From positions 186,001 to 250,000 of the forward strand of contig JAXLNO010001275.1 in assembly GCA_038087875.1 (NCBI GenBank): a stretch of 64,000 nucleotides of DNA, read 5' to 3'. The translations under genes were made by a program, and so were the position numbers. Under the pieces are notes generated by a model, which saw only the letters and a program-made list of their open reading frames with translations, had not been told where the DNA came from and did not search any database. How positions within the stretch are numbered: the first letter of the stretch is position 1; every line of letters begins with the position of its first letter. Source of the stretch: Malacoraja senta. Taxonomy: Eukaryota. Positions 4,709 through 50,800 of this stretch are shown here, piece after piece.

Positions 4709-4760
4709 ATGATTCTGTTCATCTTGTTGAGTTTCTTCCGCGTACAAGGGGCTCAAGCAG
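4709..4760 (+). CDS. MHC class I-like gene, exon 1 (signal peptide MILFILLSFFRVQGAQA + phase-1 G)
   Basis: ATG at 4709, 17 codons with a hydrophobic core and an A-Q-A cleavage-type end, strong donor CAG|GTAAGT at 4761. Phase 1 joins the alpha1 exon in frame (G+GG = Gly). The surrounding sequence is locally CpG-rich. Confidence 0.85.
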
Positions 4761-5120
4761 GTAAGTTAATGATTCTCATTTTATTCGCTACTGGGTAAAA
4801 GCGTCTTGGCTTTATCTCAATCTTGACCGGAGGCGACTGAGTTTAAAAAGCGCGCAATACACATTCAATCTGGTTCATGGTTCATGCGGACGTTAAAAGG
4901 GTTTAATCTTCACTGTTTCAGTACAATCCAGGTGGAATTTCTGCATTGATTTGCACAATGCATCATTTCCTTTGTGGAAGAAGGAACTGCAGATATTGGT
5001 TTAAACTGATTTTAACTTGTGTAAAACAAACAGGAGCGACGCGGTTTGAAACAAAAACATCTTTGATTTCAAGTTGTTATTGTAAGAATGGGAATACAAT
5101 GTGGGAGAGGCGGGAAAGGG

Positions 5121-6500
5121 CTGTGCCTGCCTCTTTGTTGCGTCCGTCGAACAATCACTGTTCCAGACGTACACTGGCCCGATCCCCGAACTCTATCTCC
5201 GCTACATTGACGACTGCATTGATGCTACTTCCTGCTCCCATGCAGAACTCACTGACTTCATCAACTTCACCACCAATTTCCATCCTGCACTCCAATTCAC
5301 TTGGACCATCTCCGACATCTCCCTACCGTTTCTAGATCTCACCATCTCCATAACAGGAAACATACTATTGACCGACATCTACTACAAACCTACTGACTCC
5401 CATAGCTATCTGGACTACACTTCTTCCCACCCTGCTTCCTGTAAAGACTGTATCCCGACTACCACTTCCTCTGTCTACGCAGCATCTGCGCCCAGGATGA
5501 GGTTTTTCTTTTCCAGGGCATCGGAGATGTCCTCATTCTTTAGGAAACTGGGGTTCCCTTCTTCCATTATAGATGAGGCACTCACTAGGGTTTCCTCGAT
5601 GCTCCGCTCTTACTCTCCCAACCCCCCCCCCCCCCATTCGTACCAAGGACAGAGTCCCCCTTGTCTTCACCTTCCACCCCATCAGCCATCGCACAGCATA
5701 TGATCCTCCATCATTTTTGCCACCTCCAAAAGGATCCCAATACTGGCCACATCTTCCCATCTCCACCTCTTTCTGCTTTCCGTGGAGACCGTTCCCTCCG
5801 AAATTCCCTGGTCAACTCGTCCTTTTCCACCCAAACCACCCCCTCCCCAGGTACTTTCCCTTGCAACCGCAGGAGATGCAACACATGTCCCTTTCCCTCC
5901 CCTCTCGACTCCATCCAAGGACCCAAACAGTCTTTCCAGGTGAGGCAGAGGTTCACTTGCACCTCCTCCAACCTCATCTACTGCATCCGCAGTTGCAGGT
6001 GTCAACTTCTCTACATCAGCGAGGCCAAGCACAGGCTCGGCAATCATTTCACTGAACTACTCCGTTCTGTCCATCTTAACCTACCTGATCTCCTGGTTGC
6101 TCAGCACTTCAACTTCCCCTCCCATTCACAATCTGACCTTTCTGTCCTGGGCCTCCTCCATGGTCAGAGTGAGGCCCAGTGCAAATTGGAGGAACAGCAC
6201 CTCATATTTTGCTTGGGTAGTTTACACCCCAGCTGTATGAACATTGACTTCTCTAACTTTAAATATCCCTTGCGTTCCCTCTCTATCCCCTCCCCTTCCC
6301 AGTTCTCCCACTAGTCTTAGTGTCTTCAACTACATTCTATCTTTGTCCCGTCAACTCCCCTGAAATCAGTCTGAAGAAGGGTCTCGACCCGATAGGTCAC
6401 CCATTCCTTCTCTCCAGAGATGCTGCCTGCCTGCTGAGTTACTCCAGCATTTTGTGTCTACCTTTGAGTTAAACCAGCATCTGCAGTTCTTTCTTACACA
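5121..6500 (+). mobile_element. 5'-truncated Penelope-like element (RT C-terminus, GIY-YIG endonuclease, terminal repeat)
   Basis: ORF 5101-5703 has YLRYIDD, LPFLD and YYKPTDSHSYLDYTSSHP. ORF 5661-6314 has a GIY-YIG-like domain (SSNLIYCIR...LLYISE). These are followed by the ctgaagaagggtctcgaccc terminal repeat. Frameshifted. Confidence 0.9.
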
Positions 6501-6656
6501 AAGTGCATTGTTTGACAGGTTCATGTTTATGGTCAAATGTGGGAAGAGAGTGAGGCACTAGTACAATGCGAAATCAATAAACGATTAGCACACACTGTGG
6601 TTTTGTTATTGATTGAGTGACAACTCTTAGCTCCAAACGTGCGGTCGTCACGTTTA

Positions 6657-20364: not shown

Positions 20365-21720
20365 ATAGAAACATATAAAATTGGTGCAGGAGTAGGCCAT
20401 TTGGCCCTTCAAGCCAGCACCACCATTCAATCTGGTCATGGCTGATCAACCAGAATCAGTACCCTGTTCCTGCTTTCTCCCCATATCCCTTGATTTCGTT
20501 AACCCTAAGAGCTAACTCTCTCTTGAATACATTCAGTGAATTGGTCTCTGCTGCCTTCTGTGGCAGAGAATTCCACAGATTCACAACACTCTGGGTGAAA
20601 AGGTTTTTCCCCATCTCAATCCTAAATGGCCTACCCCTTATTCGTAAACTGTGACCCCTGGTTCTGGACTCCCCCAACATTGAGAATATTTTTCCTGCAT
20701 CTAGTCTGTCAAATCCCTTATTAGTATTCTGTTTCTATCTGATTCCCTCTCATCCTTCTGAATTCCAGTGAATATAAGCCCAGTCGATTCATTCTTTTAT
20801 TATATGTCAGTCCTGCCATCCTGGGAATTAACCTGGTGAACTTTGCTGCACTCCTTCAATAGCAAGAATGTCCTTCTTCAAACTAGGTGACCAAGACCTT
20901 ATTATCTAAATGGTGGCCGATTAGGAAAAGGGGAGATGCAGCGAGACCTGGGTGTCATGGTACACCAGTCATTGAAAGTAGGCATGCAGGTGCAGCAGGC
21001 AGTGAAGAAAGCGAATGGTATGTTAGCTTTCATAGCAAAAGGATTTGACTATAGGAGCAGGGAGGTTCTACTGCAGTTGTACAGGGTCTTGGTGAGACCA
21101 CACCTGGAGTATTGCGTACAGTTTTGGTCTCCAAATCTGAGGAAGGACATTATAGCCATAGAGGGAGTGCAGAGAAGGTTCACCAGACTGATTCCTGGGA
21201 TGTCAGGACTTTCATATGAAGAAAGACTGGATAGACTTGGCTTATACTCGCTAGAATTTAGGAGATTGAGAGGGGATCTTATAGAAACGTACAAAATTCT
21301 TATGGGGTTGGACAGGCTAGATGCAGGAAGACTGTTCCCGATGTTGGGGAAGTCCAGGACAAGGGGTCACAGCTTAAGGATAAGGAGGAAATCCTTTAAG
21401 ACCGAGATGAGAAAAAACTTTTTCACACAGAGAGTGGTGAATCTCTGGAACTCTCTGCCACAGAGGGTAGTTGAGGCCAGTTCATTGGCTATATTTAAGA
21501 GGGAGTTAGATGTGGCCCTTGCGGCTAAAGGGATCAGGGGGTATGGAGAGAAGGCAGGTACGGGATACTGAGTTGGATGATCAGCCATGATCATATTGAA
21601 TGGCGGTGCAGGCTCGAAGGGCCGAATGGCCTACTCCTGCACCTATTTTCTATGTATCTATGTATCTATGTAAGACTGCACAAAATACTCCAGGTGCAGT
21701 CTCACCAGGGCCCTGTATAA
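20365..21720. mobile_element. Young + strand CR1 (about 20897-21670) inserted into an older - strand CR1
   Basis: ORF 20936-21571 encodes the CR1 RT C-terminus and is followed by a (tatctatg)n tail. The flanking sequence on both sides is reverse-strand CR1 that resumes at about 21672. Confidence 0.85.
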
Positions 21721-24700: not shown

Positions 24701-24781
24701 TGCCGATTTCCCTCCAAACCTTTCCTATCCATAGAAATTTCTATTACTTGACAATAATTGTATTATTTTCTTTGTTTCTAG

Positions 24782-25042
24782 GGCCTCACACACTGATCTA
24801 TTACTACACCCTGAACCACGGGAGTACTCATCTACCAGAATATAGTGTCGTGGGTGTACTGGACGTTTGTGAGATACAGTATTATGACAAAAACATGGTA
24901 ATTACAGTTCCAAGACAGAAATGGATGGCGGCTGCATTTGACAGGAATTACTGGGTAACAAATACGGTCTCTGAAACTGGTTTCCATGGAATCATCAAAG
25001 GGCAAGTCGATGAATGGATGCGGAGGCAGAACGAAACAGCAA
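24782..25042 (+). CDS. MHC class I-like gene, alpha1 domain exon
   Basis: Polypyrimidine acceptor tttgtttctag, 261 nt open, donor GTTAGT. Translation (G)PHTLIYYYTLNHGSTHLPEYSVVGVLDVCEIQYYDKNMVITVPRQKWMAAAFDRNYWVTNTVSETGFHGIIKGQVDEWMRRQNETA has class I alpha1 hallmarks: H3, Y7, D29, PR..WM, YW, R84 and an N86-x-T sequon. Confidence 0.93.
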
Positions 25043-28000: not shown

Positions 28001-28574
28001 TAGTGTTGGAATAATTTTGTTCTCTGGGCTAGAGTGGGCTCAGGAGGCTGAAAGGCCTCTTTCTCTGTCACATGGATTTATGGGCCGTTATTTATCCTTG
28101 AATTGCCTTCTTTCTCAATTTAGTCAACAATGTAAAATTGAAGTAATTGTCTGGATTGAACTATTTAACAATTGTAGATGAAAGGAAGAGCAGAGGCTGC
28201 TTTCCTCCACACACAAAGTGCTAAGGAACTCAACGGGTCAAGCGGCATCTTTGGAGAACATGGGAAGGCAGATATTTCGGGTGAGGATCCTACTTCAGAC
28301 TGAAGTTGGGACACGTTAGAACATGCTTTGTACTCACACTTGCAGTCCAGTGTTAGTTTTCAAGGATTTTTTGTTATTCACAGCTTGTAGTTGTTACATA
28401 TTCAGCAGACAGAAGATGAGCAAACTAAAGCACCTGCAAAGCACAACTAAAAGACCGCAGAAAGAAGCTTGAAAAGAAGGCTCTTATCTAAACAAAGTAC
28501 TTTCAAGAGAGAGTTAGATTTAGCTCTTAAGGTGAAAGGAATCACGGGATATGGGGGAAAAGATTAGTTAAAAC

Positions 28575-30460: not shown

Positions 30461-30940
30461 TTAGTATACATTCGGCTATTGGTGGTGTTTCTTGAAAACA
30501 CGAAGACGAGAGAATGTAAAGGATCTGCAGAACAACTAAAAGACTGCAGAAAGCACCTTGAAAAGGAGGCTCTTCATCTATACAACATAATTATGTTTTA
30601 TTCAGCTATCATTGTTTGTAGAGTTTCTTATTGGTATGAAAACATCATCCAAGTTTTGACCCTTCCATATTACTCCTGGTCCCAGGGGCATGGTTGGCAT
30701 TAGCTCATTACATTCATCCTAATAAAGGGTTGGTGTTCACAGTTGTGCCTAGATTTTTATCAATTACAACCTTGAGTTCACAAACTGTTCTTTGTCTCTG
30801 GGCTAAAGTTCACAGACTCTCCTTTTCAAGGAGTGAGCAGTTTTAAGCAAACTGACTTCAGCAAATCCTTACAAATTCCATCACCCCCCCCCCACTTTGA
30901 TTCATCAATCAATGCCAGAGGGAATGAATCATCTAAGTAA

Positions 30941-31622
30941 AGGGGCCTGTCCCACTTACGTGTCCTTGGAATGCAAATTACGCGTTGAGCCACGATGGTC
31001 CGGCGAAGGTCGGGTGCGATTACATGCGTACGCACAGCCGTCTGGAGCGCGTGACGTTATTTGAAGATGGACACAAAGCTGGAGTAAGCCAATGGGACCG
31101 GCAGCATCTCTGGAGAGAAGCAATGGGTGACGTTTCATGTCGAGACTCTTCTTCAGTCTGAAAAGAAGGGTCTTGACCCGAAACATCACCCATTGCTTCT
31201 CTCCAGAGATGCTGCCGGTCCCGCTGAGTTACTCCTGCATTTCGTGTCTATCTTCAATTTACTTGGCCCCGCTCTGGGAGTAGAAGTGGGGGCGGATCCG
31301 GACTGCAACGGCTGTGAGCCCCAGGCCGAGTTCGGCGATCGTTCGCCTGCTTCTGCTCCTGTTGAAAGTGAGACTTTGCGTCGCGCCAGGGTCTTGGGCC
31401 TGTCCCACTTTGGCCGTCAGTTCCGCGACAGGCCGTTGGCGCGCGAAGATTTCGTTCACTACAAAATTATTGGAGCCCCGCGCGATGTCGCGCACAACTC
31501 CATACCCCTCCGCGCTTCCAAGTGGGACCGGCCCCGCGCGGCCATACGATGCCCGTGCGCCTCAACGCGACCACAAGGTCGCATAATTTGTGTGCCAAGG
31601 ACACGTAAGTGGGACAGGCCCT
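30941..31622. mobile_element. PIF/Harbinger-type MITE
   Basis: TIRs aggg(g)cctgtcccacttacgtgtccttgg and ccaaggacacgtaagtgggacaggccct, TAA target-site duplication (30938-30940 and 31623-31625), CpG-rich interior, no transposase. Confidence 0.85.
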
Positions 31623-32619
31623 TAAGAATACCAAGGAAAGGTAGCGCAGCTACACATCACTGGATATCTTTAACCTGTTCAATGCCACCGCCGAGTACAC
31701 TAGGGGTCATGGCCAATAGTGAAAAATAAACTTGGCAGTGAACAGCTTAATGGTCTCCATATTTTAGAGAAAGCCTTCAATGCCCATGAGGGGTGAGCCT
31801 TATTATATCTATGTTTCTCTAAATATAGGAAGCACTTTTGTGGTAAAAGATGGGGCAGCTCGGGCCTCGAAAAGATCCAACCTTATGTGCAGCTTTATAT
31901 TTGTTTATATGCAATAAGCAAAAAGAACACAATAGAAGATAAAACATGATAATAATTATAAGCAAAGCCAAGAGATCGTGGCCTTACACGAGTTGCTGCC
32001 TTGCAGCACCAGAGACCCTGGTTTGAACCTGACTACGAGTGGTGACTGTACGGAGTTTGCATGTTCTCCCCGTAACCTGTGTGGCTTTTCTCTGAGATGT
32101 AGGTAAATTGGCTTGGTATAAATGTAAATTGTCCCTAGTGTGGGCTGAAGGGCCTGTTTCAGCACTGTATCTCCAAAGCAGTGGTTCTTAACCTGGGGGT
32201 CGTGACCCCCATGGGGGTCGTTTGGGGTTTTTCCGGGGGTCATGAAGGGGTTGTAAAGAACATCAATTTGTTGAGCCTATTTTTAGGAACCTAACAAAGG
32301 TACAGACCACACACAGTATTTTGTTCACGAATGCGCTTACGTATACACAGGGCCTATGAGAGGGGGGTGCAGGGGGTACATCGTATGCGGGCCCAGAGTC
32401 CAAATCGGAGCCCGGGAGCTGAAGGAGGGGGGATGGGAATTTCCTGAAATCTCAGAAAATGTCTGCATATATTTTGTGAAGACTAGCATTTACATTTTGT
32501 GCCTTCGGAGTTTTATATATTGTAATTCGTAGAAATTGTGATCCATAATAAAGCAGGGAATTTTAACTGGCGGGTGTGTGGTCGGGGTAACCTGATTAAA
32601 AGAGGGGGAAGGGGAAGAC

Positions 32620-33040
32620 CTATCACTACTGATGGATCTTCCCTGTAGGAGGAGGGAGAGCACTAGGACCCAACAGAGTCATCACTACTGATGGATCTTC
32701 CCTGCAGGAGGAGGGAGAGCACTAGGACCCAGCTGACCGATGGATCTGCCCTATAGGGGGGGAGCACTAGGACCCAGCAGAGTCATCACTACTGATTGAT
32801 CTTCCCTGCAGGAGGAGGGAGAGCACTAGGACCCAGCTGACCGATGGATCTGCCCTATAGGGGGGAGAGCACTAGGAGCCAGCAGAGTCATCACTACTGA
32901 TGGATCTTCCTGTAGGGGGAGGGGGACTAGGAGCCAGCTGACCGATGGATCTGCCCCATAGGGGGGGGAGCACTAGGGGCCAGCAGAGTCATCACTACTG
33001 ATTGATCTTCCCTGTAGGGGGAGGGGGACTAGGAGCCAGC
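32620..33040. repeat. Higher-order minisatellite with two alternating units (about 57 bp and 45 bp)
   Basis: Repeated atcactactgatggatcttccctg(c/t)aggaggagggagagcactaggaccc alternating with agctgaccgatggatctgccctatagggggg...cactagg. Confidence 0.9.
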
Positions 33041-33299
33041 AGAGTTAGACCACGTGCTGCCTGCATGGTGGAGGTTGTGGGCCTGGTGCTGAACCGGGAA
33101 GGTGACGACTCTGGCCCGCTGGTGGCCGGTGGAGAGGCAAGTGTCGGCGGAGTCGCTGGAGGAGGCCCGTGGGGAGCTGGAGTAGAGATATGGGCTTTCC
33201 AGCGACAGTGGCTGTGGTGTCCCCGCCCGGGGAGGTGGTGAGAGTCGGCAGCCACGGCTGTTTCAGTGGTCCGGGCCTGCGTTTGGGTGGGGGTGGGGG

Positions 33300-33645
33300 T
33301 GTTTGTCTGGGAGAGTGGGCGTGGGTAAGGGGGTGGATTTGTGTGGGTGGGTGTGAGTGGGTGTGGGTCAGTGTGGGTGGGTGGGTGTGAGTGGGTGTGT
33401 GTGTGTGTGTGTGTGGGTGGGGGGGGTGTATGTGAGTAGGTGTGTGTGTGTGTGTGTGTGGATGTGTTTGGGTGTATGTGAGTAGGTGAGTGAAGGTGTG
33501 TGTGTGTGGGGGGGTGTATGTGAGTAGGTGTGGGTGTGTGTGTGTGTGGATGTGTTTGGGTGTATGTGAGTAGGTGAGTGTGTGGGGGTGTATGTGAGTA
33601 GGTGAGTGAGTGTGTGTCTGAGTGTAAGTGTGTGTTAGTGGGAGG
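33300..33645. repeat. (GT)-rich micro/minisatellite
   Basis: gtgt runs interspersed with gtgtatgtgagtaggt units. Confidence 0.9.
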
Positions 33646-36600
33646 GTGAATTTTATAAATGAAGTTAAAACCATTAGATCTGTTGAACTTGTTAACAGAC
33701 TATTGACTTGGTAACCTGTTTCCAAATGTTTGTGTTAGCTTCAGAATACTATTAACAATTCCAGCAACAGTAGCTTCTGCAGAGGTCATTTAGCAAACTC
33801 AAGCTGATTAAGAATTATTTAAGGTCGACAATGTCTCATGAATGTCTTGTGGATTTGGCCAGGCTAAGTATTCAAAGTTAAAGTCAGTTTTATTCATCAC
33901 ATACACCCGAAGGTGCAGTGAAGTGAATTTGCCAGCAGTGATACACGTAAAAAGAACACACAATACACAATAAAATTGAACACAAACATCCACTACAGCA
34001 TTCTTCACTGTGGTGGAAGGCAACAAGTTTCAGCAAGTCCTCCTCCTTTGTTCACCCGTGTTCGGGGCCATAACCCCTCCGTAGTCGCCGCTAGGGACGG
34101 CCCGATGTACAAGGCCCTCTCGTCGGGATGATCCAAACTCCGACGTTGGGACGGACAAACACACTCTGTGGCTTGGAGGTCCCGACTCGGCACTTTCCTA
34201 CTGGAGACCGCAGCTTCAGGATGTTATAGGCATCAGGCCAGCGGTTTTGCGGTTAAATATAAAAGGATGTTTCAATGTGAATTCTTTCTCCTTATCTGTA
34301 TTGTAGCATAAACAAAGATGGTCAAAACAAAGGTAGATAAAATGCTGGAGAAACTCAATGGGTGAGGCAGCATCTATAGAGTGAAGGAAAACAAATGTGC
34401 TTTCTGATCCTTTTATGTTATTTATACTTATTTATATTTATCATGGAGGGTGTATAGGGACATAAGGCCTCAAATGCAGAAAATCAACAGAGCGCCCCAT
34501 TCCACCCCTCTCTCAACTTCCATACCCCTTTTTGCCGTGCAGGCTCCAGCTCATGGCATAAAACTGTAGCATAGTGGATAAAAACAGGATGACTAATGGA
34601 GAAGGGAAGGGGGCCCAAAATAAACTTTGTATCCACTGATAAAATTCCTGTGAGGCCCTGCGTATACACGCACAAACAGTGTATGTTGTGAACCATGTCT
34701 TCCAAGATGCGCATGTATAGTGAAGCATTTCACAAGTTGGGCTTCACAAGCATTGTTCAAAATCCGTGGTCAAGCCGCAATGTGTTCTCTGTGCCAAGGT
34801 TTTGAGTCACGAGAGCATGAAGCCCAGCAAACTGAAGATCCATTTGGAGTCTTGTCACAGTAACCTGGCGGGGAAGAGCGTGGACTCTTTCAAACGAAAA
34901 GAAGCCATAACTCAAGGGATCTCGCATCTATTCAACGGGTAACTGTGCTCATCAAAATGAAGCAGCGTTGGAGGCTTCATACCGGATTGCTTATCGAATC
35001 ACACAGACTAAGAAACCTCACAGCATCGGTGAAGAGCTTATCAAGCCATGCCTTCTCGAAGCAGCAAAGTTGGTGCTGGGGGAACAGCAGTCAAACAAGT
35101 TCAGGCAGATTTCCCTTTTGAATGACACAGTCAAAAGTTGAATCTCGGATATGAGTAATGATATTCTGCTGCAAGTAGTGAGGGCTGTGACGAGCAGTCC
35201 AGTGTATTCACTGCAACTGGGTGAGTCAACAGATGTTGCCTCATGTTCCCAACTGCTAGTCTACATTCGTTACCTCAATGGAGGAGTACCTGTTCTCGGA
35301 GCCATTGGCTACTACCACTCGGGGAGAAGATGTGTTCAGAATGCTGGAAGCCTTCCTCATCAAACATGAGCTAGGCTGGGAATGCCTTGTCGGGATGTGT
35401 ACAGTTGGGGCACCTTCCATGGTCGGTTGCAGATCCGGTTTCCAAGCCTTCGTGAAGGATGTCGCTCCCCATGTCTCCTTTACCCACTGCATGATACATC
35501 GCCATGCTTTAGCGATGAAGACTCTCCCTCTTGGTCTTCTAGAAGTGCTTTCAGATGTGGTGAAGATTGTGAACCACATCCGAGAGAGTGCAACAAACTC
35601 AAGAATCTTCAAAGCGATGTGAAGAAATGGGCGCCGATTTCACTATTCTGTTATTCCACACAGAAGTGCGCTGGCTTTCGCACTGGTAAAGTTCTCAATC
35701 ATGTGATTCAACGTTGAGAGGAAATAGTGTTGTTCTTGGAGAGAAGGGGTACTGTGAAGGAGAATCAGCTTCATGAAAAGATGCAGGTTGAACTGTTCGT
35801 GATGAAGGTTGCTTACTTGGCTGACTTCTTCGCTGAGGTGAATTCCTTGAACCTGTCACTTCAAGGAAACCTCCCAATGGCAAAGTGGCAGCATTCAGGA
35901 GGAACCTTTACCAGAGAAGAGTCCAGGACGGTGACTCGACTATCTTCCCTGAGATGATAACTCTCCTGGATGCTATGCCTGATGCTGAATGCCACTTCCA
36001 CGAGGAGATCTCAACCCACCTTCTGGCAATTAGTGAAGCCATCGAACGTTATTTCCCCGGACGGGACGACCGCTCTCGTGATCAGTGGATCATCCGACCC
36101 TTTTCCGTTGAAGACGGTGGCATCAGTGATACTGACGTGACTGCGAAGGTTGAATTTTACTGAATTCGTGAAGATGCGCAACTCAAGAGTGACTTCATGG
36201 AACAAGAGCTCGCCACGTTTTGGCTGAAAGTGAAGGACTGTCCTGCTCTTTCGAAGAGGGCCCTGACCCTATTGGTCCAGTCCCCCTCAACCTCTCACTG
36301 TGAGGGTGGATTCTCAACTATGGTAACTCTGAAAACGAAGGTACGCAATAGGCTTGTGATCGACACTGACATGAGATGCTGCCTGTCGAGCATTCGTCCA
36401 TGTTTTGATTGCCGGATGACTGGGAAGCAATTTCAGCCATCCCATTGACTGAGCATTGGCAGACATGTTTTAATAAATCGGGCTGTTTTTTTTCAAATTT
36501 TGTTTTAGAGGTCACGGTACTGATCAAGAATGCCTGATGGGGTCGTGGGGCCAAAAAGATTAAGAACCACTGCTCTAAAGCTTAAAACTAAAGGGGCTAA

Positions 36601-36654
36601 TAAAGGCCACAAAGTGGCTTTAGTGAGTCGGATTACAGAAAATCCCACATCTTT

Positions 36655-37372
36655 TTCAAGGTTTCATGGTTAGTTTATTGTCACATATACCAATTAAGGT
36701 ACATTGAAATGCAGACTACCATACACCATACAAAAAGAAAGCAACAAGACACACAATAACGTAAAAGTTAACATAAACATCCACAACAGAGGAGACCGCA
36801 CGTTCCTTACTGTGATGGAAGGCAATAAAGTCTAATCTCCTTCCTCTTTATCTCCCGCAGTCGGGGCAATCAAACAATCTGCAGTCGGTGGTCGAAACCC
36901 CCCGTTGGGGAATTGAAACTCCCACGTCGGAGCGGTCGGAGCGGTCGAAACTCCTGCGGCTTGGAGGTCCCAGATGTCGGTCTCGATCGGGGACCGCGGG
37001 CTCCGCGATGTTAAAGTCTTGCAGGCTCTCACAGTTGGAGCCCTAAAGTCGATCCCTGACAGGGATTGCGAGCTCCATGATGGTAAGTCCACAGGCTCCT
37101 GCAATGGATCTCCCGGTCGATCTCTAGCAAAGGCCGCCATTCATCAATGTTAGGCCGCATTGTGGACGGAGATACGATACAGAAAATATCACATCAACGT
37201 CGAGGTAAGAGATTAGGAAAAGTTTCCCACAACTCCCCCAACCCCCACCCCCAAAACAAGCTAAAGAACACTAAAGAATATACATTTAACACGTACAAAA
37301 CAGACACAAGGAAGGAAGGGACAGACATACTGTTGGCGAGGCAACCATTGCAGCAAAAGGTGGATTGCTTAA
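36655..37372 (-). mobile_element. CpG-rich non-autonomous retroelement with a Rex/L2-type 3' tail
   Basis: Shares its tail (gtgacaataaa plus short repeats) and the aacatcc...cactgtg(a/g)tggaaggc block with copies at 33865-34220, 38783-39628 and 41620-42125. Confidence 0.6.
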
Positions 37373-38424
37373 GGATATAGAAGGGAATATGTGCTTGGAG
37401 TTTGTGGATATAGGCGAGGTTTGGTTTCACCAAGGAAGACATGTAGAATAGTAAGGACCATTAATAGTAAGTACATCATAAAATCCTCCAACATTTTTGC
37501 CACCTCCAACGGGATCCCACTACTGGTCACATCTTCCCATCTCCACCCCTTTCTGCTTTCCGCAGAGACCGTTCCCTCCGAAACTCCCTGGTCAACTCGT
37601 CCCTTCACACCCAAACCACCTGCTCTCCGGATACTTTCCCCTGCAACCGCAGGAGATGCAACACCTGTCCCTTTACGTCCCCCCTCGACTCCGTCCAAGG
37701 ACCTAAAGTCTTTCCAGGTGAGGCAGAAGTTCACTTGCACCTCTTCCAACCTCATCTACTGTATCCGCTGTTTCAGTTGTCAACTTCTCTACATCAGTGA
37801 GACCAAGCGCAGGCTCGGCGATCGTTTTGCTGAACACTTCCCCTCAGTCCGTCTTACCCTACCCGATCTCCCGGTGGCTCAGCACTTCAACTCCCCCTCC
37901 CATTCCCAATCTGACCTTTCTGTCCTGGGCCTCCTCCATTGTCAGAGTGAGGCCCAGCCCAAATTGGAGGAACAGCACCCCATATTTCGCTTGGGTAGTC
38001 TATACTCCAGCGGTATGAACATTGACTTCTATAACTTTCGATAGCCCTTGATTTCTCTCTCCATCCCCTCCCCCTTCCCAATTCTGCCACCAGTCTTACT
38101 GTCTCCGCCGACATTCTATCTTTGTCCCTCCCCTGACATCAGTCTGAAGAAGGGTCTCGACCCAAAACAATGCCCATTCCATCTCTCCAGGGAAGCTGCC
38201 TGACCCGCTGAGTTACCCCAGCATTTTGTGTCTCTCTACGATTTTAACATCTGCAGCATCTGCAGTTCTTTCTTACACATGGAGAATCAATGTGGAGAAT
38301 GCTAACATGCAGGGACACTTTGAAGTTAAGTAAGAAGGAGATGTTGGATCACTTGAAGAGAAATGTGGATAAATCCCCAGGACAGAGGGGGTGTAGTGGA
38401 TGATAATAATAATCGTTGAAAACA

Positions 38425-38630
38425 TTAGTGCCGTGCTGGTTTCCAACGGGCACGGTGACGGACGCACCACACATCTCTGTCCTCCATGCAGCTGGCAAGC
38501 TCCTCTTTTGTCTCTACACATGCGTCTTCCATCAACGTCTTCAACATCGTCTTGAATGGCCATCCTGGGTCAAGTCTTCCATGGGTGGAAGACGCATGCC
38601 AGCAAACAGGCATGTCTGGCATTTAACGAG
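38425..38630 (-). mobile_element. RTE-like LINE C-terminal remnant
   Basis: GRL.PG.P.KT..KTL.ED...EL..CMEDRDVW resembles the C-terminus of RTE-group ORFs. Confidence 0.5.
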
Positions 38631-38634
38631 CATT

Positions 38635-40000
38635 GATGTATATATTGTAGACTTTCGTCCCAAATATCTTTCGTTATGGGTTGGCCTAATTCATTTTCCC
38701 ATGTGTGTCTATATAAATCCGTCGGCGGGACCTCACTATCTAAGAGGGTATTATAAATATGAGATATTAATTTTTCTGTATTAAGATTCAAGATTCAAGA
38801 TTCAAGAAGTTTATTGCCATGTCAACTGAGTTGATAGGAATTTGACTTGCCATGCAGCACACAAATAAAGATTACAACAAAGAATTTAACAGTAAACATA
38901 AAAACATCCCCCCACAATGGTTCCCACTGTGGGGGAAGGCAGCAAAGTCCAGTCCCATCCCCAGTTCACCCATAGTCGGGGCCTATTGAGGCCTCTGCAG
39001 TCGCCGCTACGGCAGCCCGATGCCTCAGGCCCTCTCGCCGGATGATGATGCTCCGGCGTCGGGTGAACACTCTCAGCGGCCCGGAGTGTCTGGAGCGGCT
39101 GCCTCCTCCCAGTAGACCGCGGCTCCCGAAGTCCACGAGCCGCGCTGGTCGATGCCCCGACTCTGTCGACCTCGTCGTCAGATCCCAGGCTCCGCGGTGT
39201 TCCAAGCTCAGCGCCGCTGGAAGCTCCACTGACCGCAGACCGCAGCTCTGCGATGTTAGTGCCGGCCGTCACAGCACTCCGGAGCTTACTGCACGGCGAC
39301 CCGGGTTAGGCATCGCCCGCTCCGCGATGGTGCTTCAGCGCTGTGCCGCCGCCGAAGCTGAAGTCCTGGCTGGTCCCGGCAGGAAAACGCCGCTCCAGCC
39401 TGCCCGTAGGCCGCGAGGAAGGGGCGAAGATACGGCTCGGAGAAAAGCCGCATCTCCGACCAGGTAGGGACTGAGAAGAATAGTTTCCCCCTTCCCCCTA
39501 CCCCCCCCCCCCACATAAAAAGACTAAAAGATCTCCAACCAACACTCTCAACTAACTAAAAATAAAAAAAAAGAGTGAAAAAACTAACAGCTGCTGGCGG
39601 GGCAGCCATATTCGACGGCACCCCCTGTTGATGTTATTACGATGTTTATTCAAACATTCATCAAGGATTTCTGGTTCCCTAGTTCTGTAATCTTGTGTAT
39701 TTGATTTAATGTAATCTCTAATTTGTAAATATCTGAAAAAGTTATTTGAGTGTGGTCCGTAAATCTGTTGTAACCCCTGAAATTAAAGAAAAGTGCCTTT
39801 CCTATAAAGATGTCCCATCTTTTTAATTCCTTAATTTTTCCATTGTGTAAAGCCTTTATCCAACATGGAGGGTTTGAATAAAGGGTTGTTTATAATGGGG
39901 AGACAGAGTGATAAATTATCCAATTTTAAAGTCTTTTTTAATTGTTTCCAAATTCGTATACCACTATATATTATAGAATTTTCACTATAGGTTTTTTAAT
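38635..40000 (-). mobile_element. L1/Tx1 ORF2 3' remnant, split by the insertion at 38783-39628
   Basis: NTEKLISHIYNTLLDSEVPPTDLYRHTWENEL...HQCSLNARH is closely similar to the C-terminus of the full-length L1 ORF2 at 58869-59795. Confidence 0.8.
38783..39628 (-). mobile_element. CpG-rich non-autonomous retroelement (same family) inserted in an L1 remnant
   Basis: (ttgaatc)n tail on the - strand. Its 5' end atggctgccccgccagcag resembles atggttgcctcgccaacag of the 36655-37372 copy. It interrupts L1 ORF2 homology. Confidence 0.6.
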
Positions 40001-42940
40001 GCAATTTTGTGGGAGCAAACATAATCGAACCAATTTCAAAAGGCAAACAGTCTTTCACTATTTTGTATGACTCAATGAGGTCCCCCCTTATTCTTCTAAA
40101 CTCCAGCGAGTACAGGCCCACTGCCATCAAATGGTCATCATATGTTAACCCATTCATTCCTGGGATCATTCTTGTACACCTCCTCTGGACACTCTCCAGA
40201 GCCAGCACATCCTTCCTCAGATATGGTGCCCAAAATTGCTCACAATGCTCCAAATGTGGCCTGACCGGCGCCTTATAGAACCTCAGCATTACATCCCTGT
40301 TTGACAGGGAGAAAGTATAATTGATGTATTTCATATTAGTTAACCATGGATTTTCTTGACCACAGTTGACAGCCCCTAATGGGATTGCATGTCTATCATA
40401 CATCTCAAAAGAGCACAGCATTAAGCTTCGAAGGGCAAAATTTACACGAGTTGTGCAGGTCAAGTGTTTTTTTGCACAGAGAGAGCTTGATACCTAGAAT
40501 GCGCTACCAGGAATGGTGGTAGAGGAAGACATGATAATGGTGCTTAAGAAGGTTTTGGACAGGCTTGTGAATGTGCAGCGAATACAAGGATATGGATCAC
40601 ATGCAGGCAGTGGAAATCAGTTTTGGTTTAGTTTAGAGATAGAGTATGGAAACAGGATCTTTGGGCCACTGAGTCTGCACTGACCAGCAATTGCCCATTC
40701 ACTATTTTTGTCCTACAAGCTAGGGACAATTTACAGAAGCCAATTAACCTACAAACCTGCACGTCTTTTGTATTTGGGAGGAAACCGTAGCCCCCAGAGA
40801 AAACCCACAGGGTGACAGAGAGAACGTACAAACTCCGTCCAGACAGCACTCTAGTCAGGATCGAACCCGGGTCTCTAATGCTGTAAGACAGCCATTCTAT
40901 CACTGTGCCACTGTGTTGCCTTAGTTTAACTTGGTATCCTGTTCGACATGGACATTGCAGGCTGAAAGTCCTGTTCTTGTACTGTTCTATGTTCTATATA
41001 TTCTCATTGGACAGGGCAGAGTTTTTCACTCCTCCAGCCTCCATGTTGAATACTTAATCCCAGTTTAAATCTGATTCAATTAGTCAATCCATTTCTCCCC
41101 CCCCCCCTCCTGCCCTGATCCCCATTCTATATCTTGAAGTAGTCATTCCCTTTTTCGCTCCCTGGTCTGTCTACTATCCCCACAACTTTCCTCTACTTTC
41201 CTGTCTTGGTGCATGCAACATCTATCCATTTACCTCTTCCCTTCCTACTGTCCATAGACCCAGGTAGTTCTTCAAAGTGAAACAGCGTGAAACACTTGCA
41301 CTTCCAGTCAAATCTACTGCATTTGGTTTTCATGCGTAATCTTCCACATCGCATCAATGAAACAAATTGAGTGGCTGCGTTCTGGAGAACCCGCATTCAA
41401 TCCATGGGACTTTCTAAGATTCCTAATTCCTGCCACTTTAATTCTCCATTCAACACCCACCATGATCCATCCATCTGTACCTCTTACACTAGGATAACAA
41501 GGGTGAAAGTAACCTTGAGGACCAACAACTCAGCTTCTACCTTGACATGTTGCAGCCTTTCACACTCAATTCCACGTTCAACAAGTTGTATTCCCTGTCG
41601 ATAAAAGAACTGGTCATTTCATAAGTTCATGTTCATTTATTGTCACATACACCAATTGGTGTAGTAAAATTCACTGGCCAGGTCAGTCATACAATTTAAA
41701 AAAGCAACAGACTCAAAAACACATTTTGACATAAACATCCATCATAGTGACTCCTACACATTCCTCACTGTGATGGAAGGCGAAAATAAAGTTCCAAGTC
41801 CTTCCCTTGTTGTTCTTCCTTGGTCGGGGGCCTCGAGCCCCCCGTTGAACGGACGGTCTTGAGTCCCGTAGCCGGCGGCGTTCGGGCCCTCCGCGTCGAG
41901 GTGATCAGCTCCCGCATCGGGGGGATTGTCAGCTCCCCTGCGCCGGGCGATCGAACCTCGCGTCGGGGCTGTACGAACCTTCTGTGGCGTTGGAGCTCCC
42001 GACTAGCCTCTCCCGAGACTGGGAGCCCTTGATGGTAAGTTCGCAGGCCGCGTTGGGAGCGATCCCAGGCAAGGGATCCGCTCCGATGGTAAGTCCACGC
42101 CCCGTGGTGGGGCTCACGACGGTCCTTTTCAACTGTTAAGTTGAAGTCAGAAAGAACAGATGCAAGAAGTATGAAGGACACCAAGCTGAAACATTACGTA
42201 ACCATGTCTTCCAGATGCTGCCTGAGCCACTGAGTTACACCTGCACGTTTTTGTGTTTTTTTTAAATTACAGTAAAGTTATCCACCTGCAAAATCAGGAC
42301 AGCCTGACCTACTTGAGTACTGCAGTATGTGCTGCATTTTATATAACTCTGTTTAGTTTCATGCATGCAGAGATGCAGTGAAATGGTTTGGATGGAACAG
42401 CAGATGCTGGACACCCCGTCCCTTCTCTCCAGAGATGCTGCCTGTCCCGCTGAGTTACTCCAGCTTTTTGTGTCTGTCTGCAGTGAAATGGTTGTTCTGC
42501 ATTCTCCCCAGTCAAGTCATACTGTACATAAGTACAATTCGTCCTCTTCTGGAACAGCACGCAGAGATCCACCACATTCCAGAACTATCTTGCAGCTTCC
42601 AAGTCTCTGAGAAGTCTGATTTTGCCCTAAGGAAATACCCAATTTCACATTTTCTCATGTTAAGGCCCAGTGTCATAACAGCACTGGATTGATGAAGTAG
42701 AGGCGCCTGCCTCAGTTTAAGTTTTTCTGTTTCAAGATTGTGATCAAACCCTCGTCACTGGAACTGTGTCGCAGTGCCACCCATTACGTATCAGTCCCAA
42801 TTATCTTTCAACATGCTGGAATCACTTGTTTTTTATCCTTTTTAGACTTTTTTCATGAATTGTTCAGCTTAAACAGTTATGCTACAGCAGTTAAGCGCAG
42901 CTACCACTTAGTTCCAGAGACGTAACAACACAAGAGATAG

Positions 42941-43122
42941 TGTTGGAAGAATGATCAAACTCACACATAGTGGTTAGAATCCATAGTCTTTTATTAGTAA
43001 CTCTGCAGAGGAAACACAAGGTGCTTTCTTCTCAGCATGCTTACTACCAGTCTACCAGAGAGAGAGAGAGCTGTCTAATAAGCCTGTGGGCGGAGCCACA
43101 GTATGAGCGACACTAATCTACA
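42941..43122 (-). mobile_element. Solo LTR (182 bp)
   Basis: TGT...ACA termini, perfect 5-bp TSD gatag (42936-42940 and 43123-43127), AATAAA on the - strand. Confidence 0.75.
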
Positions 43123-44756
43123 GATAGGCACAGGGATAAGTTTCGGTTTATTATTGTCACGTTTAGATTCGAGGTACAGCATGAAAATAGGCCTTTTGGC
43201 CCACTGAACATGTGCTGACTAACGACCACCCAAATATTAGTTCTATCCTACACACTAGCGACAATTTACAGAAGCCAAAAACTTACAAACCTGCACGTCT
43301 TTGAATGTGACGGAACTGTAGCACCCGGAGATAACTCACATGGTCACAGAGAGGATATATGAACTCTATATAGACAGCACCCATTGTCAGGATTGAACTT
43401 TGGTCTGTGGTACTGTAAGGCAGCAACTTTCCCTCTGCGCCACTGTGCTGCCCATGTACTGAGGTAGTGTGTAAAGCTTTGATTTGCATGCTATCCAATT
43501 GGATGAGGTAACAAAATACATATATATGATCATCAAACTCAAGAACTGTAGGTAGAGCAAAGGGGAAGGTACAGAGTGTGGCATGTAGTTCTCAGCAATG
43601 TAGCACACCAGTTCCATTAGATAAGTGTTTCGACACGAAACGTAACACATTCCTTCTCTCCAGAGATGCTGCCTGACCCGTTGAGTTACTCTAGCATTTT
43701 GTGTCTATCTGCGGTTTAAACCAGCATCTACAGTTCCTCCCTACATAGTTCTATAAACAAAGTCCACTGTCTTTAATGGGGTAGTGGTCAATTGGACAGT
43801 ACCGTAGCTTATGGAACGATCATTCAGAAGCCTGATTTTCTCCTCGGTTATCAAGTTTCCGAGTAAGCCATTTGGTCCTCTAACCTGCCCACCATTCAAT
43901 ATGACCATGGCTGACGTTCCTCAGGCATCAACTCCTGTTCGATGTCAGTTCCTCATTGCACTCAGTTCTCCAATTTAAGTTTAATTAAGTTAACTACCGC
44001 CACATTAAATGCTTCCAATGATTTTGTCTTCACAAATCTCTGGCGCCAGAGAATGACCACACTCTGCAAAAAGAGATTTTGTAAACAAATGACTGGTCTC
44101 TTTTATCTCTTATTGAAGAGGAGTGAAAATACTGCCAATTTTAAGCTTGTCCCCTCCCCAATTGACCCTCATTTCATAACTTGTCAATTATTTATTATTG
44201 TCAATAATATGCCCTAGTGAAAAGATTTGCCGTTGGTATTAGTTTATTATTGTCACGTGAACTGTGATATAGTCAAAAGTTTGTCTGTGTGTTATCCAAT
44301 CAGATCATACTACACATGTGCAATCAAGCCATCCACAAGTAGAACAGTGCAAAGAGAAAAATTCTCAGAGTGCAGAATATCGGGTTACAATATCATAGCA
44401 TTACAGTTACAGAGAAAGTGCAGATCAAAAAGAGTTGCAAGGATCACAATGAGATTGGTTGGAAGATCAGGGCAACATCTTATCTTACATGAGAACCATT
44501 CAGTAGTCCAATAACAGTGGGGAAGAAGCTGTTCCTGAATTTAATGGTACGTACTTTCAAACTTCCTTGTGTACTGTCTTAACAGGGAGCGTGCAATCCC
44601 TTTTAAACCACGTGGTTGGTTGATGGTGACGAAAGAGGCAAAATGGGGCAGATGTGGACAGTAACTTGGTTGTTGTAGTAGACTGAAGAATATTTTGTGG
44701 TGGGTGACTGTGCAAGTTTTACTGAAGATGAAAATAACCATCTTACTGTCTTGTAG

Positions 44757-45023
44757 TTTCCCCTGAGGTCACTCTCGCTGCCCGCCCTGATGATCATTCA
44801 GTCCTGTACTGCACTGTGTTTGGATTTTACCCACCGGCCATCAATGTCAGCTGGTTGCAGAATGGTCAACATGTCTCTGAGACCAAATCTTCTGGGGTCA
44901 TACCCAACAACGATGGAACATATCATCTAAAGTCTGTCCTTGAGTATGATCCGTATGATGGGAAACAGTATTCCTGTCATGTCGATCACAGCAGCCTGCC
45001 CGGTGGGAAGACCATCATCTGGG
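44757..45023 (+). CDS. MHC class I-like gene, alpha3-type Ig C1 domain exon
   Basis: Acceptor ctgtcttgtag, 267 nt open, donor G|GTAAG. Translation SPEVTLAARPDDHSVLYCTVFGFYPPAINVSWLQNGQHVSETKSSGVIPNNDGTYHLKSVLEYDPYDGKQYSCHVDHSSLPGGKTIIW has the C1-set CxxxGFYP, W and YSCxVxHxSL motifs and the class I alpha3 PNxDGTY motif. Confidence 0.93.
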
Positions 45024-47712: not shown

Positions 47713-47820
47713 AAGGAAATAGGAAGAAAGACAGGCACATAGGCCTTATTGCCGTGTGTGTGCTGATATTGCTGGCTATTGTCTTGGCAGTAATTGTTTT
47801 GTGGAGAAAAAAGAGGAGAG
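47713..47820 (+). CDS. MHC class I-like gene, connecting peptide/transmembrane exon
   Basis: Acceptor ttatttttcag, 108 nt, donor G|GTAAG, phase 1-1. Translation (E)GNRKKDRHIGLIAVCVLILLAIVLAVIVLWRKKRR: a hydrophobic span of about 22 residues followed by a basic stop-transfer signal. Confidence 0.88.
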
Positions 47821-50800
47821 GTAAGATGGAAAAATTGTGATGCACTGTTGCTAGTAAAGGTATTGGGCTTGAAGAAATGATTGATCTCAAGTAGGATAAG
47901 GCAGCAGCTACACCTGAAATGCCTCGACAGTCACCACTGTCAACTAGCCTTTGTGCTGTTGTTAAATGTTTCTGATAATCAGATATTTAAAAATTGTGAA
48001 TTCAGTGTAAAAAAAAGTTAAACATTATGGATTCACTGCCCCAAATCCTAGAAATATCAATGAGTCATTAAAAAGTACAGCATGGAAGCAGTCCTTTTGG
48101 CCCACCGTGTCCATGCCAACCACCAACCACCTGTTCTCATGAATTCTATCTCATTGCACCTTCTCATCCAGTCACCCACCCACTAGGGGCAATTTACAGT
48201 GGCCAATTAAACTATAAACTGACACATCTTAGGATGTGTGAGGAAACCGGAGCCCCTGGAGGGATCCAATGCGGTTACACGGAGAACATGCAAACTCCAC
48301 ATAGATGGCACTCAAGGTCAAAATTGAACCCGGGTCTGTGTCGCTGTGAGGCAGCAGCTCTACGAGTTGTGACACTGTGCTGCTCTGTTGGGGGCTCGCA
48401 CTGTTCATGATCCAAGTCAGCTACGAGGCAGATTGGTTGCAGTTTAACATTTACTAGTTTTGTTTAGTTTAATTTAGAGATACAGTAACGAAACAGGCCC
48501 TTCGGCCCACCGAGTCTGCGCTGACCAGCGATCCCCGCACATTAACACTATCCTATACACGCACACCAAGCCAATTAACCTACATACCTGTACATCTTTG
48601 GAGTGTGGGAGGAAACCTTAGATCTCGGAGAAAACACACGCGGTCATGGGGAGAACGTACAAACTCTGTACAGACAGCATCAGTAGTCGGGATCGAACCC
48701 GGGTCTCCGGTGCTGCAAGCGCTGTAAGGCAGCAACTCTACTGCTGCACTCAGTAGCTGCCACCAAGGCCGCTGTTGCTGGAAGACTCTATGTTTCTATG
48801 ACTCAAAATTAAGTGGGAATGTGAGTAGTGGGAGAAATGGTTCAATGTGGAAAGTCGAATGAATGAGCAACAACATGACAGGTGGACTACAATGTGAAAC
48901 AGGGCAGCACAGAGCCAGAGACCTGAATTAAATACCGACATCGGCTGTTGTATCTGTAGAGTTTGCATGTTGTTCCTGTGACCATGTGGGTTTCCCCAGG
49001 TGCTCTGGTTTCCTCCCACATCCCCAAAACATGGTTTGGTAGGTTAGTTGTCCCCTAGATTGTGCATGATACAATGTGGGGAGAGCTGATGAGAATGTGG
49101 GACAAATATAGGATTAGTGTACATGAATGGTTGGTGCAGGTCAGTGGGACAAAGGCCATGTTTGTATGCTGCATATTTCCATGACTCTATATGATGTAGA
49201 AAGATGTTGACTATTTTTGATTTATAAGATTGGGAAAGACTGTGAGGGACAGTGCTAGAGTAACTCAGCAGGTCAGGCAACATCCCTGGAGACCATGGAT
49301 AGGTGACAATCTGGTTCGAGACTCTTCAGGCAAATTACAATGGGTATTCCTCCGCTTAAGTCTGATAGTAGTGTACAGATGCACCTCAACCACTGACTTG
49401 CTCAACAAGTGCTTAAATTAGTTGAATTAAAGTATGTTTGGAGTAACATGCAGCAGTCCTTAAAATCTACCATTTCCCAAATCCCAAGAGAGCTGGATGA
49501 TCAGGGTTTTAGTGTAAATTCAAAGTCATCTATATCACTGATTTCTTGCATGTGATCACACTGTTGTAAGATATATTCTGGTGATGAATTGCAGTTCACT
49601 TTCCTCCTGTGTAAAGGAGTTATTGTGTTGAATATAACAAGTGGAGGGAAAGTCAGTGTAGGATTTAGAGTTTGTACGTAATGCAGCATGGTAGTGCAGC
49701 TGGTAGAACTGCTGCCTCACAACGCCAGAGACCCAGGTTCAATCTGGACCTCGGGTACTGTCTACGTGGAGTTTGCATGTTCTCCTTGTGACTATGTGGG
49801 CTTCCTCAGGGAGCTCCGGTTTCCTCCCATATCCCAAAGATGAGCACGTGTGCAGGTAATCATCCTCGGTAAGTCACCCTGATAGTGTAGGGGGTGGATG
49901 GGAAATCTATTATGAATGGGTGATTGCTGGTTAGTATGGATTTGGTGGCACAAATGGCCTGTTTACACACTGTATCACTGTTTTCAAGAGAGAGTTAGAT
50001 TTAGCTCTTAGGGCTAAGGGATTCAAGGGATATGGGGAAACAGCCAGATCGGAGTATTAATTTTGGATGATCAGCCATGATTGTATTGAATGGCGGTGCT
50101 GGCTCAAAGGGCCGAATAGCCTATTCCTGCACCTATTTTTTTATGTTTCTATCTTTCTATTAAATAAACTAAATTGGAAGACAGAAGGTATTTACTGATG
50201 CATCTTCACACCAGCTGTAAATGTCATAAACTGTGAGAATTGATTGCAAATGTTATACAATATTATAAACTAAACTGGGTGATCAAAATGACAAGATGGA
50301 TGAAGAGCAGAGTTTTCATTGAAATAACAGACGTGCAGCTTTCTCGAGCACTTGGCCTTGGTTGTGTAATATTTCCTCTTCAAAATACAATGTTCCCTGG
50401 CATTTCTGGTCTGAGGCACCATTCAGCAAGTATATTTCCTGAAACGGAGGTTCTGCTTTCATGGTATCAAGATGTCCAACAGCTCCAGCACCCAGATCAG
50501 AACCTTGCCAAAACTAAGAATGCAGCAACAATTTAGTCATTGAACATCAACGACATGCATATTTGAACTGAGGCAATGGTTAGCTTATTATCACTGTAAA
50601 CCAGTCGTGGTCATGGGTCTGCCATTGTGGTCACTATTAGTGAGGGTGATTAACTATCATGTAGCAGTGAAACGGAAAAGAATTGGCTTTTCAAGCCCAC
50701 GGAGCCATAGAGTCATACGGCATGGAAATGGCCACCTCAACTTGGCCATGTCAACCAAGATGCCATGTTTAAACTACAATTTACCTGCAATTGACCCATA

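What the first reader, a model, noticed from the sequence alone, without database searches (positions are those of the whole stretch)
4709..47840. MHC class I-like gene that appears to lack the alpha2 exon: an in-frame alpha1+alpha3 two-domain chain
Seen: four intact, GT-AG, phase-1 exons (leader, alpha1, alpha3-type C1, TM) splice into an open 229-codon frame MILFILLSFFRVQGAQA-GPHTLIYYY...NETA-ISPEVTL...KTIIW-EGNRKK...WRKKRR. In the 19.7-kb gap-free interval 25043-44756 I found no alpha2-like open exon (no LQxMxGC start, no C101-C164 pair, no EWLxxYL end). The interval is almost all recognisable repeats and no ORF in the track resembles alpha2. Known: class I heavy chains need alpha1+alpha2 for the groove, and alpha2 supplies major beta2m contacts. 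HLA-G2, a splice isoform with alpha1+alpha3, forms class II-like homodimers. Inference: this may be a genomically fixed alpha1+alpha3 molecule that dimerises with itself or a partner chain. That is the crossed domain combination relative to class II and W-category chains. Alternatives are a recent exon-loss pseudogene, an assembly deletion, or an alpha2 too diverged for me to spot.
Basis: partly seen in the sequence, partly recalled or inferred. Interest (0 to 1): 0.9.

Follow-up and report, generated by a model that had tools for sequence, protein, structure and literature searches.

The report
Skate class I gene missing alpha2 exon
A copy of a multi-copy skate immune (MHC class I-like) gene has lost the exon for its second domain through a small deletion patched by a piece of a jumping gene, so it is most likely a recently crippled copy and not a new kind of two-domain molecule.

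Summary
Leader, alpha1, alpha3 and TM exons are intact, GT-AG, phase 1, and splice into 229 open codons. No alpha2 exon exists anywhere in the 64-kb window by tblastn, a family alpha2 HMM or blastn.

The cause is now mapped. The window is collinear with the intact orthologous genes of Amblyraja radiata (~90% DNA identity) and Rhinoraja longicauda (~85%), and both carry a 276-nt alpha2 exon at the matching intron position. In the window, orthology stops at 38588 and resumes at 40050. Between lie 23 nt of filler and a 582-bp internal L1 ORF2 fragment truncated at both ends, later split by an 847-bp insertion. This is a lineage-specific deletion of about 1.4 kb, not an ancestral two-domain design.

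The family is multicopy in skates (at least 10 paralogs in Rhinoraja), and all 18 relatives examined keep alpha2. The in-frame result follows automatically from phase 1-1 exons.

The retained exons changed at about 0.4 of the non-exon rate on the window's branch (7 changes against 18.6 expected, P=0.002). So the loss is recent, or constraint persists.

Best reading: a recent exon-deletion relic (~0.75). A functional alpha1-alpha3 chain (~0.12) and an assembly artefact (~0.08) are not excluded. The scan holds at least 7 unverified notes of alpha2-less genes elsewhere in this genome.

The parts
4709..4760 (+). Leader exon (ATG at 4709; donor G|GTAAGT). An upstream in-frame ATG-TGA lies at 4688-4693.
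   Evidence: Aligns to the leader exons of L001 (Rhinoraja) and L002 (Amblyraja) at 90-92%.
24782..25042 (+). Alpha1 exon, 261 nt, phase 1-1.
   Evidence: phmmer to PDB 9ch4_A residues 3-86 gave E=1.7e-36, and to shark and other class I chains E about 1e-8. It is 93-95% identical in DNA to the orthologs.
36573..38588 (+). Remnants of the orthologous intron just upstream of where alpha2 should be: 36573-36657, 37357-37451, 38279-38400 and 38400-38588, interrupted by insertions.
   Evidence: blastn to L001 29119-29465 and L002 52558-52963.
38589..38611 (.). Left deletion junction. It holds 23 nt of filler, including an inverted copy of 38520-38531.
   Evidence: Orthology with L002 ends at 38588 (=L002 52963), and L002 continues with unrelated sequence.
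38612..40049 (-). Patch that replaced the alpha2 exon. It is an internal L1 ORF2 fragment (38612-38787 plus 39635-40049, about 80% identical to the L1 at 58714-59294) lacking both the L1 5' and 3' ends. A nested 847-bp insertion (38788-39634) splits it.
40050..40745 (+). Orthologous intron resumes (=L001 30569-31250, about L002 60340 onward). The right junction has a GTCT microhomology.
44757..45023 (+). Alpha3 exon (C1-set Ig domain), 267 nt, phase 1-1.
   Evidence: Pfam C1-set E=3.2e-20. 9ch4_A residues 182-268 matched at E=3.3e-35. It is 97% identical in DNA to the orthologs.
47713..47820 (+). Connecting peptide/TM exon, ending on a GT donor.
51237..64000 (.). End of collinearity with both orthologs, followed by L1-type elements and an N gap. 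The last coding exon (DYQxIxPNQNxxC* in relatives) is not in the window.

Best explanation
This is the syntenic ortholog of an ordinary three-domain nonclassical MHC class I gene of a skate-expanded family whose closest solved structure is PDB 9ch4. In the window's lineage, about 1.4 kb of ancestral intron and exon sequence, including the whole 276-nt alpha2 exon, was lost. The break was sealed with 23 nt of filler and a 582-bp L1 fragment truncated at both ends. That pattern looks like double-strand-break repair or an endonuclease-independent L1 capture. The deletion itself is shown; the repair mechanism is inferred. All class I exons are phase 1-1 and the alpha1 donor and alpha3 acceptor are untouched, so any transcript would by default splice alpha1 to alpha3 in frame. 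That would give a leader-alpha1-alpha3-TM chain that cannot build the alpha1/alpha2 groove on its own. The most likely status is a recently disabled member of a birth-and-death multigene family. The retained exons are still clean because the loss is recent.
For: The window is collinear with L001 (Rhinoraja longicauda) and L002 (Amblyraja radiata) from upstream of the leader to 51237. The alpha2 exon is present in both at the matching position, L001 29629-29904 and L002 53464-53739. It matches 9ch4_A residues 89-179 at E=1.4e-36. Window orthology breaks at 38588 and resumes at 40050, with the L1 patch between. There is no alpha2 remnant anywhere in the window. The family is multicopy: 10 Rhinoraja paralogs sit on one chromosome, and there are several Leucoraja copies. 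All aligned relatives keep alpha2, with long invariant blocks. The window carries a unique G46V change at a position that is G in 15 and D in 2 of the 17 aligned relatives that cover this position. No alpha2-less relative appeared among the proteins searched. Sense-strand L1 insertions have displaced the 3' exon out of the window.
Against: All four retained exons are open and have splice sites identical to the intact orthologs. On the window's own branch the exons carry 7 changes (4 nonsynonymous, 3 synonymous). If they had drifted at the rate of 17,379 aligned non-exon sites, 18.6 would be expected (Poisson P=0.002). There is therefore no sign of a long neutral period. That fits a very recent loss, but equally fits continuing selection or gene conversion from intact paralogs. 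No expression data could be consulted.
Confidence: 0.75

Rival explanations
1. The truncated gene is functional. It would be expressed as a leader-alpha1-alpha3-TM chain maintained by selection, perhaps forming beta2m-free homodimers like the HLA-G2 splice isoform, or pairing with another chain.
For: The exons and splice sites are intact and the junction is in frame. The exon substitution rate on the window branch is 0.38 of the non-exon rate, no higher than in the intact orthologs at 0.53 and 0.74. There is a precedent for an alpha2-deleted class I isoform that acts as a homodimer (HLA-G2; PMC11756389 and bioRxiv 10.1101/2023.10.14.562373). First-reader notes list at least 7 more 'alpha2-less' class I-like genes on other pieces of this genome, but these are unverified.
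Against: The deletion is lineage-specific and looks accidental, given the filler and the L1 scrap. The in-frame result needs no selection. 4N:3S on 7 changes has no power. G46V hits a conserved turn residue. No alpha2-less protein or transcript-derived fragment was found among relatives.
Confidence: 0.12
2. The alpha2 exon exists in the animal but was dropped by the assembly through mis-join or collapse in a repeat-rich intron.
For: The intron is full of LINE copies, and the family sits on many scaffolds in related assemblies. No reads could be examined.
Against: The interval has no gap. The left junction joins unique orthologous sequence to an internal L1 position through 23 nt of filler. The right junction shows 4-nt microhomology. 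A later element is nested inside the patch. Collapse between two repeats would not produce these features.
Confidence: 0.08
3. An alpha2 exon is present in the intron but too diverged for the reader to recognise.
For: None found.
Against: Relatives 86-93% identical in alpha1/alpha3 give no alpha2 hit. The family HMM gave a best E of 1.2. The orthologous exon DNA gives no blastn hit. The syntenic position is occupied by an L1 patch.
Confidence: 0.01

Closest known systems
Elasmobranch nonclassical MHC class I family represented by PDB 9ch4_A and by NCBI models 'class I histocompatibility antigen, F10 alpha chain-like' of Rhinoraja longicauda (XP_078272153.1), Amblyraja radiata (XP_032898133.1) and Leucoraja erinacea (XP_055521885.1)
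   Same: Alpha1 is 93% and alpha3 93% identical to the Rhinoraja protein. The exon order, phases, splice sites and flanking introns are the same. The lineage-typical LDxCE cysteine in alpha1 is kept.
   Different: The alpha2 exon is deleted, the G46V change is unique, and the 3' exon is not within the window. I could not tell which published shark lineage name applies (UDA, UEA, UFA or UGA, as listed in PMC10751288 and PMC12562908), because no named sequences were available.
HLA-G2 (alpha2-deleted splice isoform of HLA-G)
   Same: The same alpha1-alpha3-TM domain composition, arising because class I exons are phase-compatible.
   Different: HLA-G2 is made by exon skipping from a gene that still encodes alpha2, and its receptor binding is documented. 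Here the exon is gone from the DNA and no expression or binding is known.
Truncated or fragmentary class I pseudogenes of birth-and-death MHC families (e.g. human HLA class I gene fragments; from general knowledge)
   Same: A member of a tandemly expanded class I family that has lost part of its coding sequence through a TE-associated rearrangement.
   Different: The remaining exons show no stop codons or frameshifts, so the lesion is young.
MHC class II and W-category chains (one membrane-distal domain + one Ig domain + TM)
   Same: Only the domain count.
   Different: Both domains are class I alpha1 and alpha3 by sequence. The two-domain state is a secondary loss that post-dates the split from the Amblyraja lineage, so it says nothing about the class I/class II origin.

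Membership tests
MHC class I heavy chain | Alpha1 domain of class I type | tested here: met
   phmmer gave 9ch4_A E=1.7e-36, shark class I 6lup_A E=4.9e-9, and many other class I chains. Pfam MHC_I did not score on the 86-aa exon alone.
MHC class I heavy chain | Alpha2 domain with the C101-C164 disulfide, completing the groove | tested here: not met
   No alpha2 in the window. It is present in the orthologs.
MHC class I heavy chain | Membrane-proximal C1-set Ig domain (alpha3), then TM | tested here: met
   C1-set E=3.2e-20. 9ch4_A residues 182-268 matched at E=3.3e-35. The TM exon aligns to relatives.
MHC class I heavy chain | Complete reading frame through to a stop in the cytoplasmic exon | tested here: inconclusive
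   The last exon was not found in the window. Collinearity ends at 51237, followed by L1 elements and an N gap.
Unprocessed exon-deletion pseudogene | Loss of an essential coding exon relative to syntenic orthologs | tested here: met
   Deletion mapped between 38588 and 40050 against two orthologs.
Unprocessed exon-deletion pseudogene | Relaxed constraint (neutral substitution rate, stops, frameshifts) in the remaining exons | tested here: not met
   No stops or frameshifts. There were 7 changes against 18.6 expected if neutral, P=0.002. This is compatible with a recent loss.
Unprocessed exon-deletion pseudogene | No expression or no protein | not testable with these tools
   No transcript data for this genome. 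No alpha2-less relative in the protein collections.
HLA-G2-like functional alpha1-alpha3 chain | Alpha1 joined directly to alpha3, in frame | tested here: met
HLA-G2-like functional alpha1-alpha3 chain | Expressed, beta2m-free homodimer with receptor binding | not testable with these tools
   Needs RNA and protein work.
MHC class II / W-category chain | Ancestral two-domain gene structure with class II- or W-type domains | tested here: not met
   The domains are class I alpha1/alpha3. The two-domain state is a derived deletion.

The most novel reading that the evidence does not exclude
The alpha2-less gene is expressed and kept by selection as a two-domain class I chain. It may be one of several alpha2-less copies in this skate genome that descend from the same L1-patched deletion. 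That would make a genome-encoded analogue of the HLA-G2 homodimer.
Probability: 0.1. Interest if true: 0.75.

Novelty: new member of a known kind. Interest (0 to 1): 0.25.

Why it matters
If this is only a young exon-deletion relic, it is an ordinary product of birth-and-death evolution in an expanded nonclassical class I family. It is useful mainly as an annotation caveat, because gene predictors may call an in-frame 'two-domain class I protein' here. It is also a clean example of an L1-patched deletion removing an exon. It would matter more if the truncated chain were expressed and conserved. That would be the first genome-encoded alpha1-alpha3 class I molecule, and a natural test of whether such chains can work without alpha2.

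Tried and rejected
1. Hidden or diverged alpha2: rejected by tblastn, the family HMM and blastn.
2. Alpha1 and alpha3 belonging to different genes: rejected, because the whole span is collinear with single genes in two other skates.
3. A W-category, class II-like or 'crossed' ancestral design: rejected, because the loss is lineage-specific.
4. Looking for the last cytoplasmic exon by regex, blastn-short and synteny: not in the window.
5. Fetching Leucoraja erinacea loci for P0001, P0152 and P0170, and identifying the window's record through its L1 ORF1: not on record.
6. Searching for short alpha1-containing fragments that might show an alpha1-alpha3 junction: no candidates.
7. Naming the shark lineage (UDA, UEA, UFA or UGA): the relevant papers were not held, and PDB codes 9CH4 and 8GM8 appear in no held paper.
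8. Pfam on intron ORFs: only one RVT_1 hit.
9. Using W223L as a sign of decay: dropped, because that site is variable in the family.
Full report
**Observation**

Each has an AG acceptor (where one is needed) and a GT donor, and all junctions are phase 1. The spliced 688 nt read as the 229 codons quoted. The TM exon ends on a donor, so the gene should continue. The alpha1-alpha3 interval has no N; the only N run in the window is 55332-55604.

**What the domains are**

- The alpha1 exon matches class I alpha1 domains in the PDB. The best match is 9ch4_A residues 3-86 (E=1.7e-36), followed by shark and other class I chains at about 1e-8.
- The alpha3 exon is a C1-set domain (Pfam E=3.2e-20). It matches 9ch4_A residues 182-268 (E=3.3e-35).
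- The closest solved relative therefore has a normal alpha2 between the two parts that the window keeps.

**The family**

A full HMMER search with alpha1, a word-index search and a cluster look-up recover an elasmobranch nonclassical class I family.

- Members are Leucoraja erinacea (XP_055521884/5, XP_055486429), Amblyraja radiata (XP_032898133) and ten paralogs on one Rhinoraja longicauda chromosome. More distant members come from sawfish, rays and sharks.
- All aligned members carry a highly conserved alpha2, NYHYVQGQFGC...DCVDLWKTYYAIGKTYLTRK.
- That alpha2 matches 9ch4_A residues 89-179 at E=1.4e-36, and class I, MR1 and ZAG alpha2 domains at about 1e-13.

**Is alpha2 hidden in the window?**

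No.

- tblastn (word size 2, E<=10) with four full-length relatives hits only leader, alpha1, alpha3 and TM.
- An HMM of 18 family alpha2 domains was run with filters off against all 3134 six-frame segments of at least 12 aa. The best hit had E=1.2.
- blastn of the Rhinoraja alpha2 exon and its flanks finds nothing.

**Where it went**

I fetched the Rhinoraja gene (L001) and the Amblyraja gene (L002). The window is collinear with both, from upstream of the leader to 51237. DNA identity is about 85% with Rhinoraja and about 90% with Amblyraja. So this is the same gene with the same long introns.

- In both orthologs a 276-nt, phase 1-1 alpha2 exon lies between alpha1 and alpha3, at L001 29629-29904 and L002 53464-53739.
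- The intron just upstream of that exon is still present in the window, at 36573-36657, 37357-37451, 38279-38400 and 38400-38588.
- Orthology ends at 38588 (=L002 52963). It resumes at 40050 (=L001 30569, about L002 60340).
- The 1461 nt between are 23 nt of filler (38589-38611, containing an inverted copy of 38520-38531) and an internal L1 ORF2 fragment on the minus strand.
- The L1 fragment spans 38612-38787 plus 39635-40049. It is about 80% identical to the L1 at 58714-59294. It lacks both the L1 3' end with its tail and the 5' part.
- An 847-bp insertion (38788-39634) is nested in the fragment. The right junction shows a GTCT microhomology.
- The ancestral sequence missing from the window is the alpha2 exon with its flanks, L001 29466-30568, plus about 340 bp shared only with Amblyraja.

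This is a real-looking mutational scar: a deletion sealed by filler and a captured L1 scrap. That it reflects double-strand-break repair or an endonuclease-independent L1 insertion is my inference from what is generally known of such junctions.

**Consequence**

The alpha1 donor and alpha3 acceptor are identical to those of the intact orthologs, and every exon is phase 1-1. A transcript would therefore splice alpha1 to alpha3 in frame without any selection for that outcome. The open 229-codon frame is not in itself evidence of function.

**Functional or dead?**

I counted changes private to each of the three lineages.

| Lineage | Non-exon sites (17,379 three-way aligned) | Exons (688 nt) |
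|---|---|---|
| Window | 2.70% | 7 changes (1.02%; 4 nonsynonymous, 3 synonymous) |
| Amblyraja | 4.33% | 22 changes |
| Rhinoraja | 7.96% | 29 changes |

If the window's exons had drifted at the non-exon rate, 18.6 changes would be expected (Poisson P=0.002).

- The retained exons have not spent a large part of this branch as neutral sequence. Either the deletion is recent, or selection or gene conversion from intact paralogs continues. The data cannot separate these.
- Of the four private amino-acid changes, G46V replaces a residue that is G in 15 and D in 2 of the 17 aligned relatives that cover this position. S73N and W223L are at variable sites. L16Q is in the signal peptide.
- No alpha2-less relative appeared among the proteins searched.
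- The last coding exon (DYQxIxPNQNxxC* in relatives) is not in the window. Collinearity with both orthologs stops at 51237 and is followed by L1-type elements: one on the sense strand with an intact 352-aa ORF1, one on the antisense strand, and an N gap. Whether the 3' end survives further downstream cannot be told.

**Verdict**

Its headline interpretation, a fixed two-domain design 'crossed' relative to class II and W-category chains, is not supported, because the two-domain state is a secondary, lineage-specific accident in an otherwise ordinary three-domain gene of a multicopy family.

- A young exon-deletion relic is the best reading (about 0.75).
- A still-functional HLA-G2-like chain remains possible (about 0.12). 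The precedent is in PMC11756389 and bioRxiv 10.1101/2023.10.14.562373.
- An assembly artefact is unlikely but untested (about 0.08).

**Other notes from this scan**

The scan's notebook lists at least seven further first-reader notes of 'alpha2-less' class I-like genes on other pieces of this genome. I could not read those windows.

In the intact orthologs the mechanical ORF listing shows alpha2 only from 'MNDHSPNVG...'. That is downstream of the Cys101 motif and has an atypical C-terminal helix. An unaided reader could therefore miss it, and those notes need the HMM test used here before they count. If some are real and share the 38588/40050 junction, the functional reading would gain weight.

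**Lineage name**

Reviews list the shark nonclassical lineages UBA, UDA, UEA, UFA and UGA (PMC10751288, PMC12562908). I could not tie this family or 9ch4 to one of them.

Noticed in passing
window 53676-59800 (+) and 60203-63187 (-): Two L1-type retrotransposons lie downstream of the TM exon. The sense-strand one has an intact 352-aa ORF1 and long ORF2 pieces (432, 346, 93 and 308 aa) and contains the N gap 55332-55604. It looks young.
   Followed up: partly
window 4688-4693: An upstream in-frame ATG is immediately followed by TGA. Amblyraja has ATG CGA at this spot, giving the annotated N-terminal extension MREAVRE, while Rhinoraja has no upstream ATG. This is probably a harmless mini-uORF created by a CpG transition.
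   Followed up: partly
window 24782-25042 (alpha1, codon 47 of the spliced model): The 'extra unpaired cysteine' in alpha1 (LDxCE) is a family trait. It is present in 15 of 18 aligned relatives from sharks and rays, and in PDB 9ch4_A. It is not a peculiarity of this copy.
   Followed up: partly
window 38788-39634: An 847-bp element is nested in the L1 patch. It starts with (GATTCAA)3-like repeats, ends in an A-rich stretch, and has a CpG-rich core (39001-39400: about 68% GC, 47 CpG). Its identity is unknown, and there is one weak relative at 34006-34150.
   Followed up: no
window 28558-30347, 20900-21670 and 1-410: These are copies of a young LINE family with an RVT_1 reverse transcriptase. 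They are 91-96% identical to copies in the Amblyraja locus at non-orthologous places, so the family was recently active in both lineages.
   Followed up: no
window 35151-36448 (+): A run of ORFs (72-114 aa) in neighbouring frames looks like one decayed transposase-type gene. Pfam gave no hit.
   Followed up: partly
L002 (Amblyraja radiata CM021389.1 425600-523347): The intact Amblyraja ortholog spans 77.7 kb. Its introns are 32, 11, 20, 6 and 7 kb and have been inflated by LINE insertions.
   Followed up: partly
Leucoraja erinacea models XP_055521880-2 (P0166, P0167, P0169, P0152): NCBI isoforms fuse this class I family's exons with a GPR139-like 7TM gene on a 249,698-bp scaffold. These are probably read-through or mis-joined models.
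   Followed up: no
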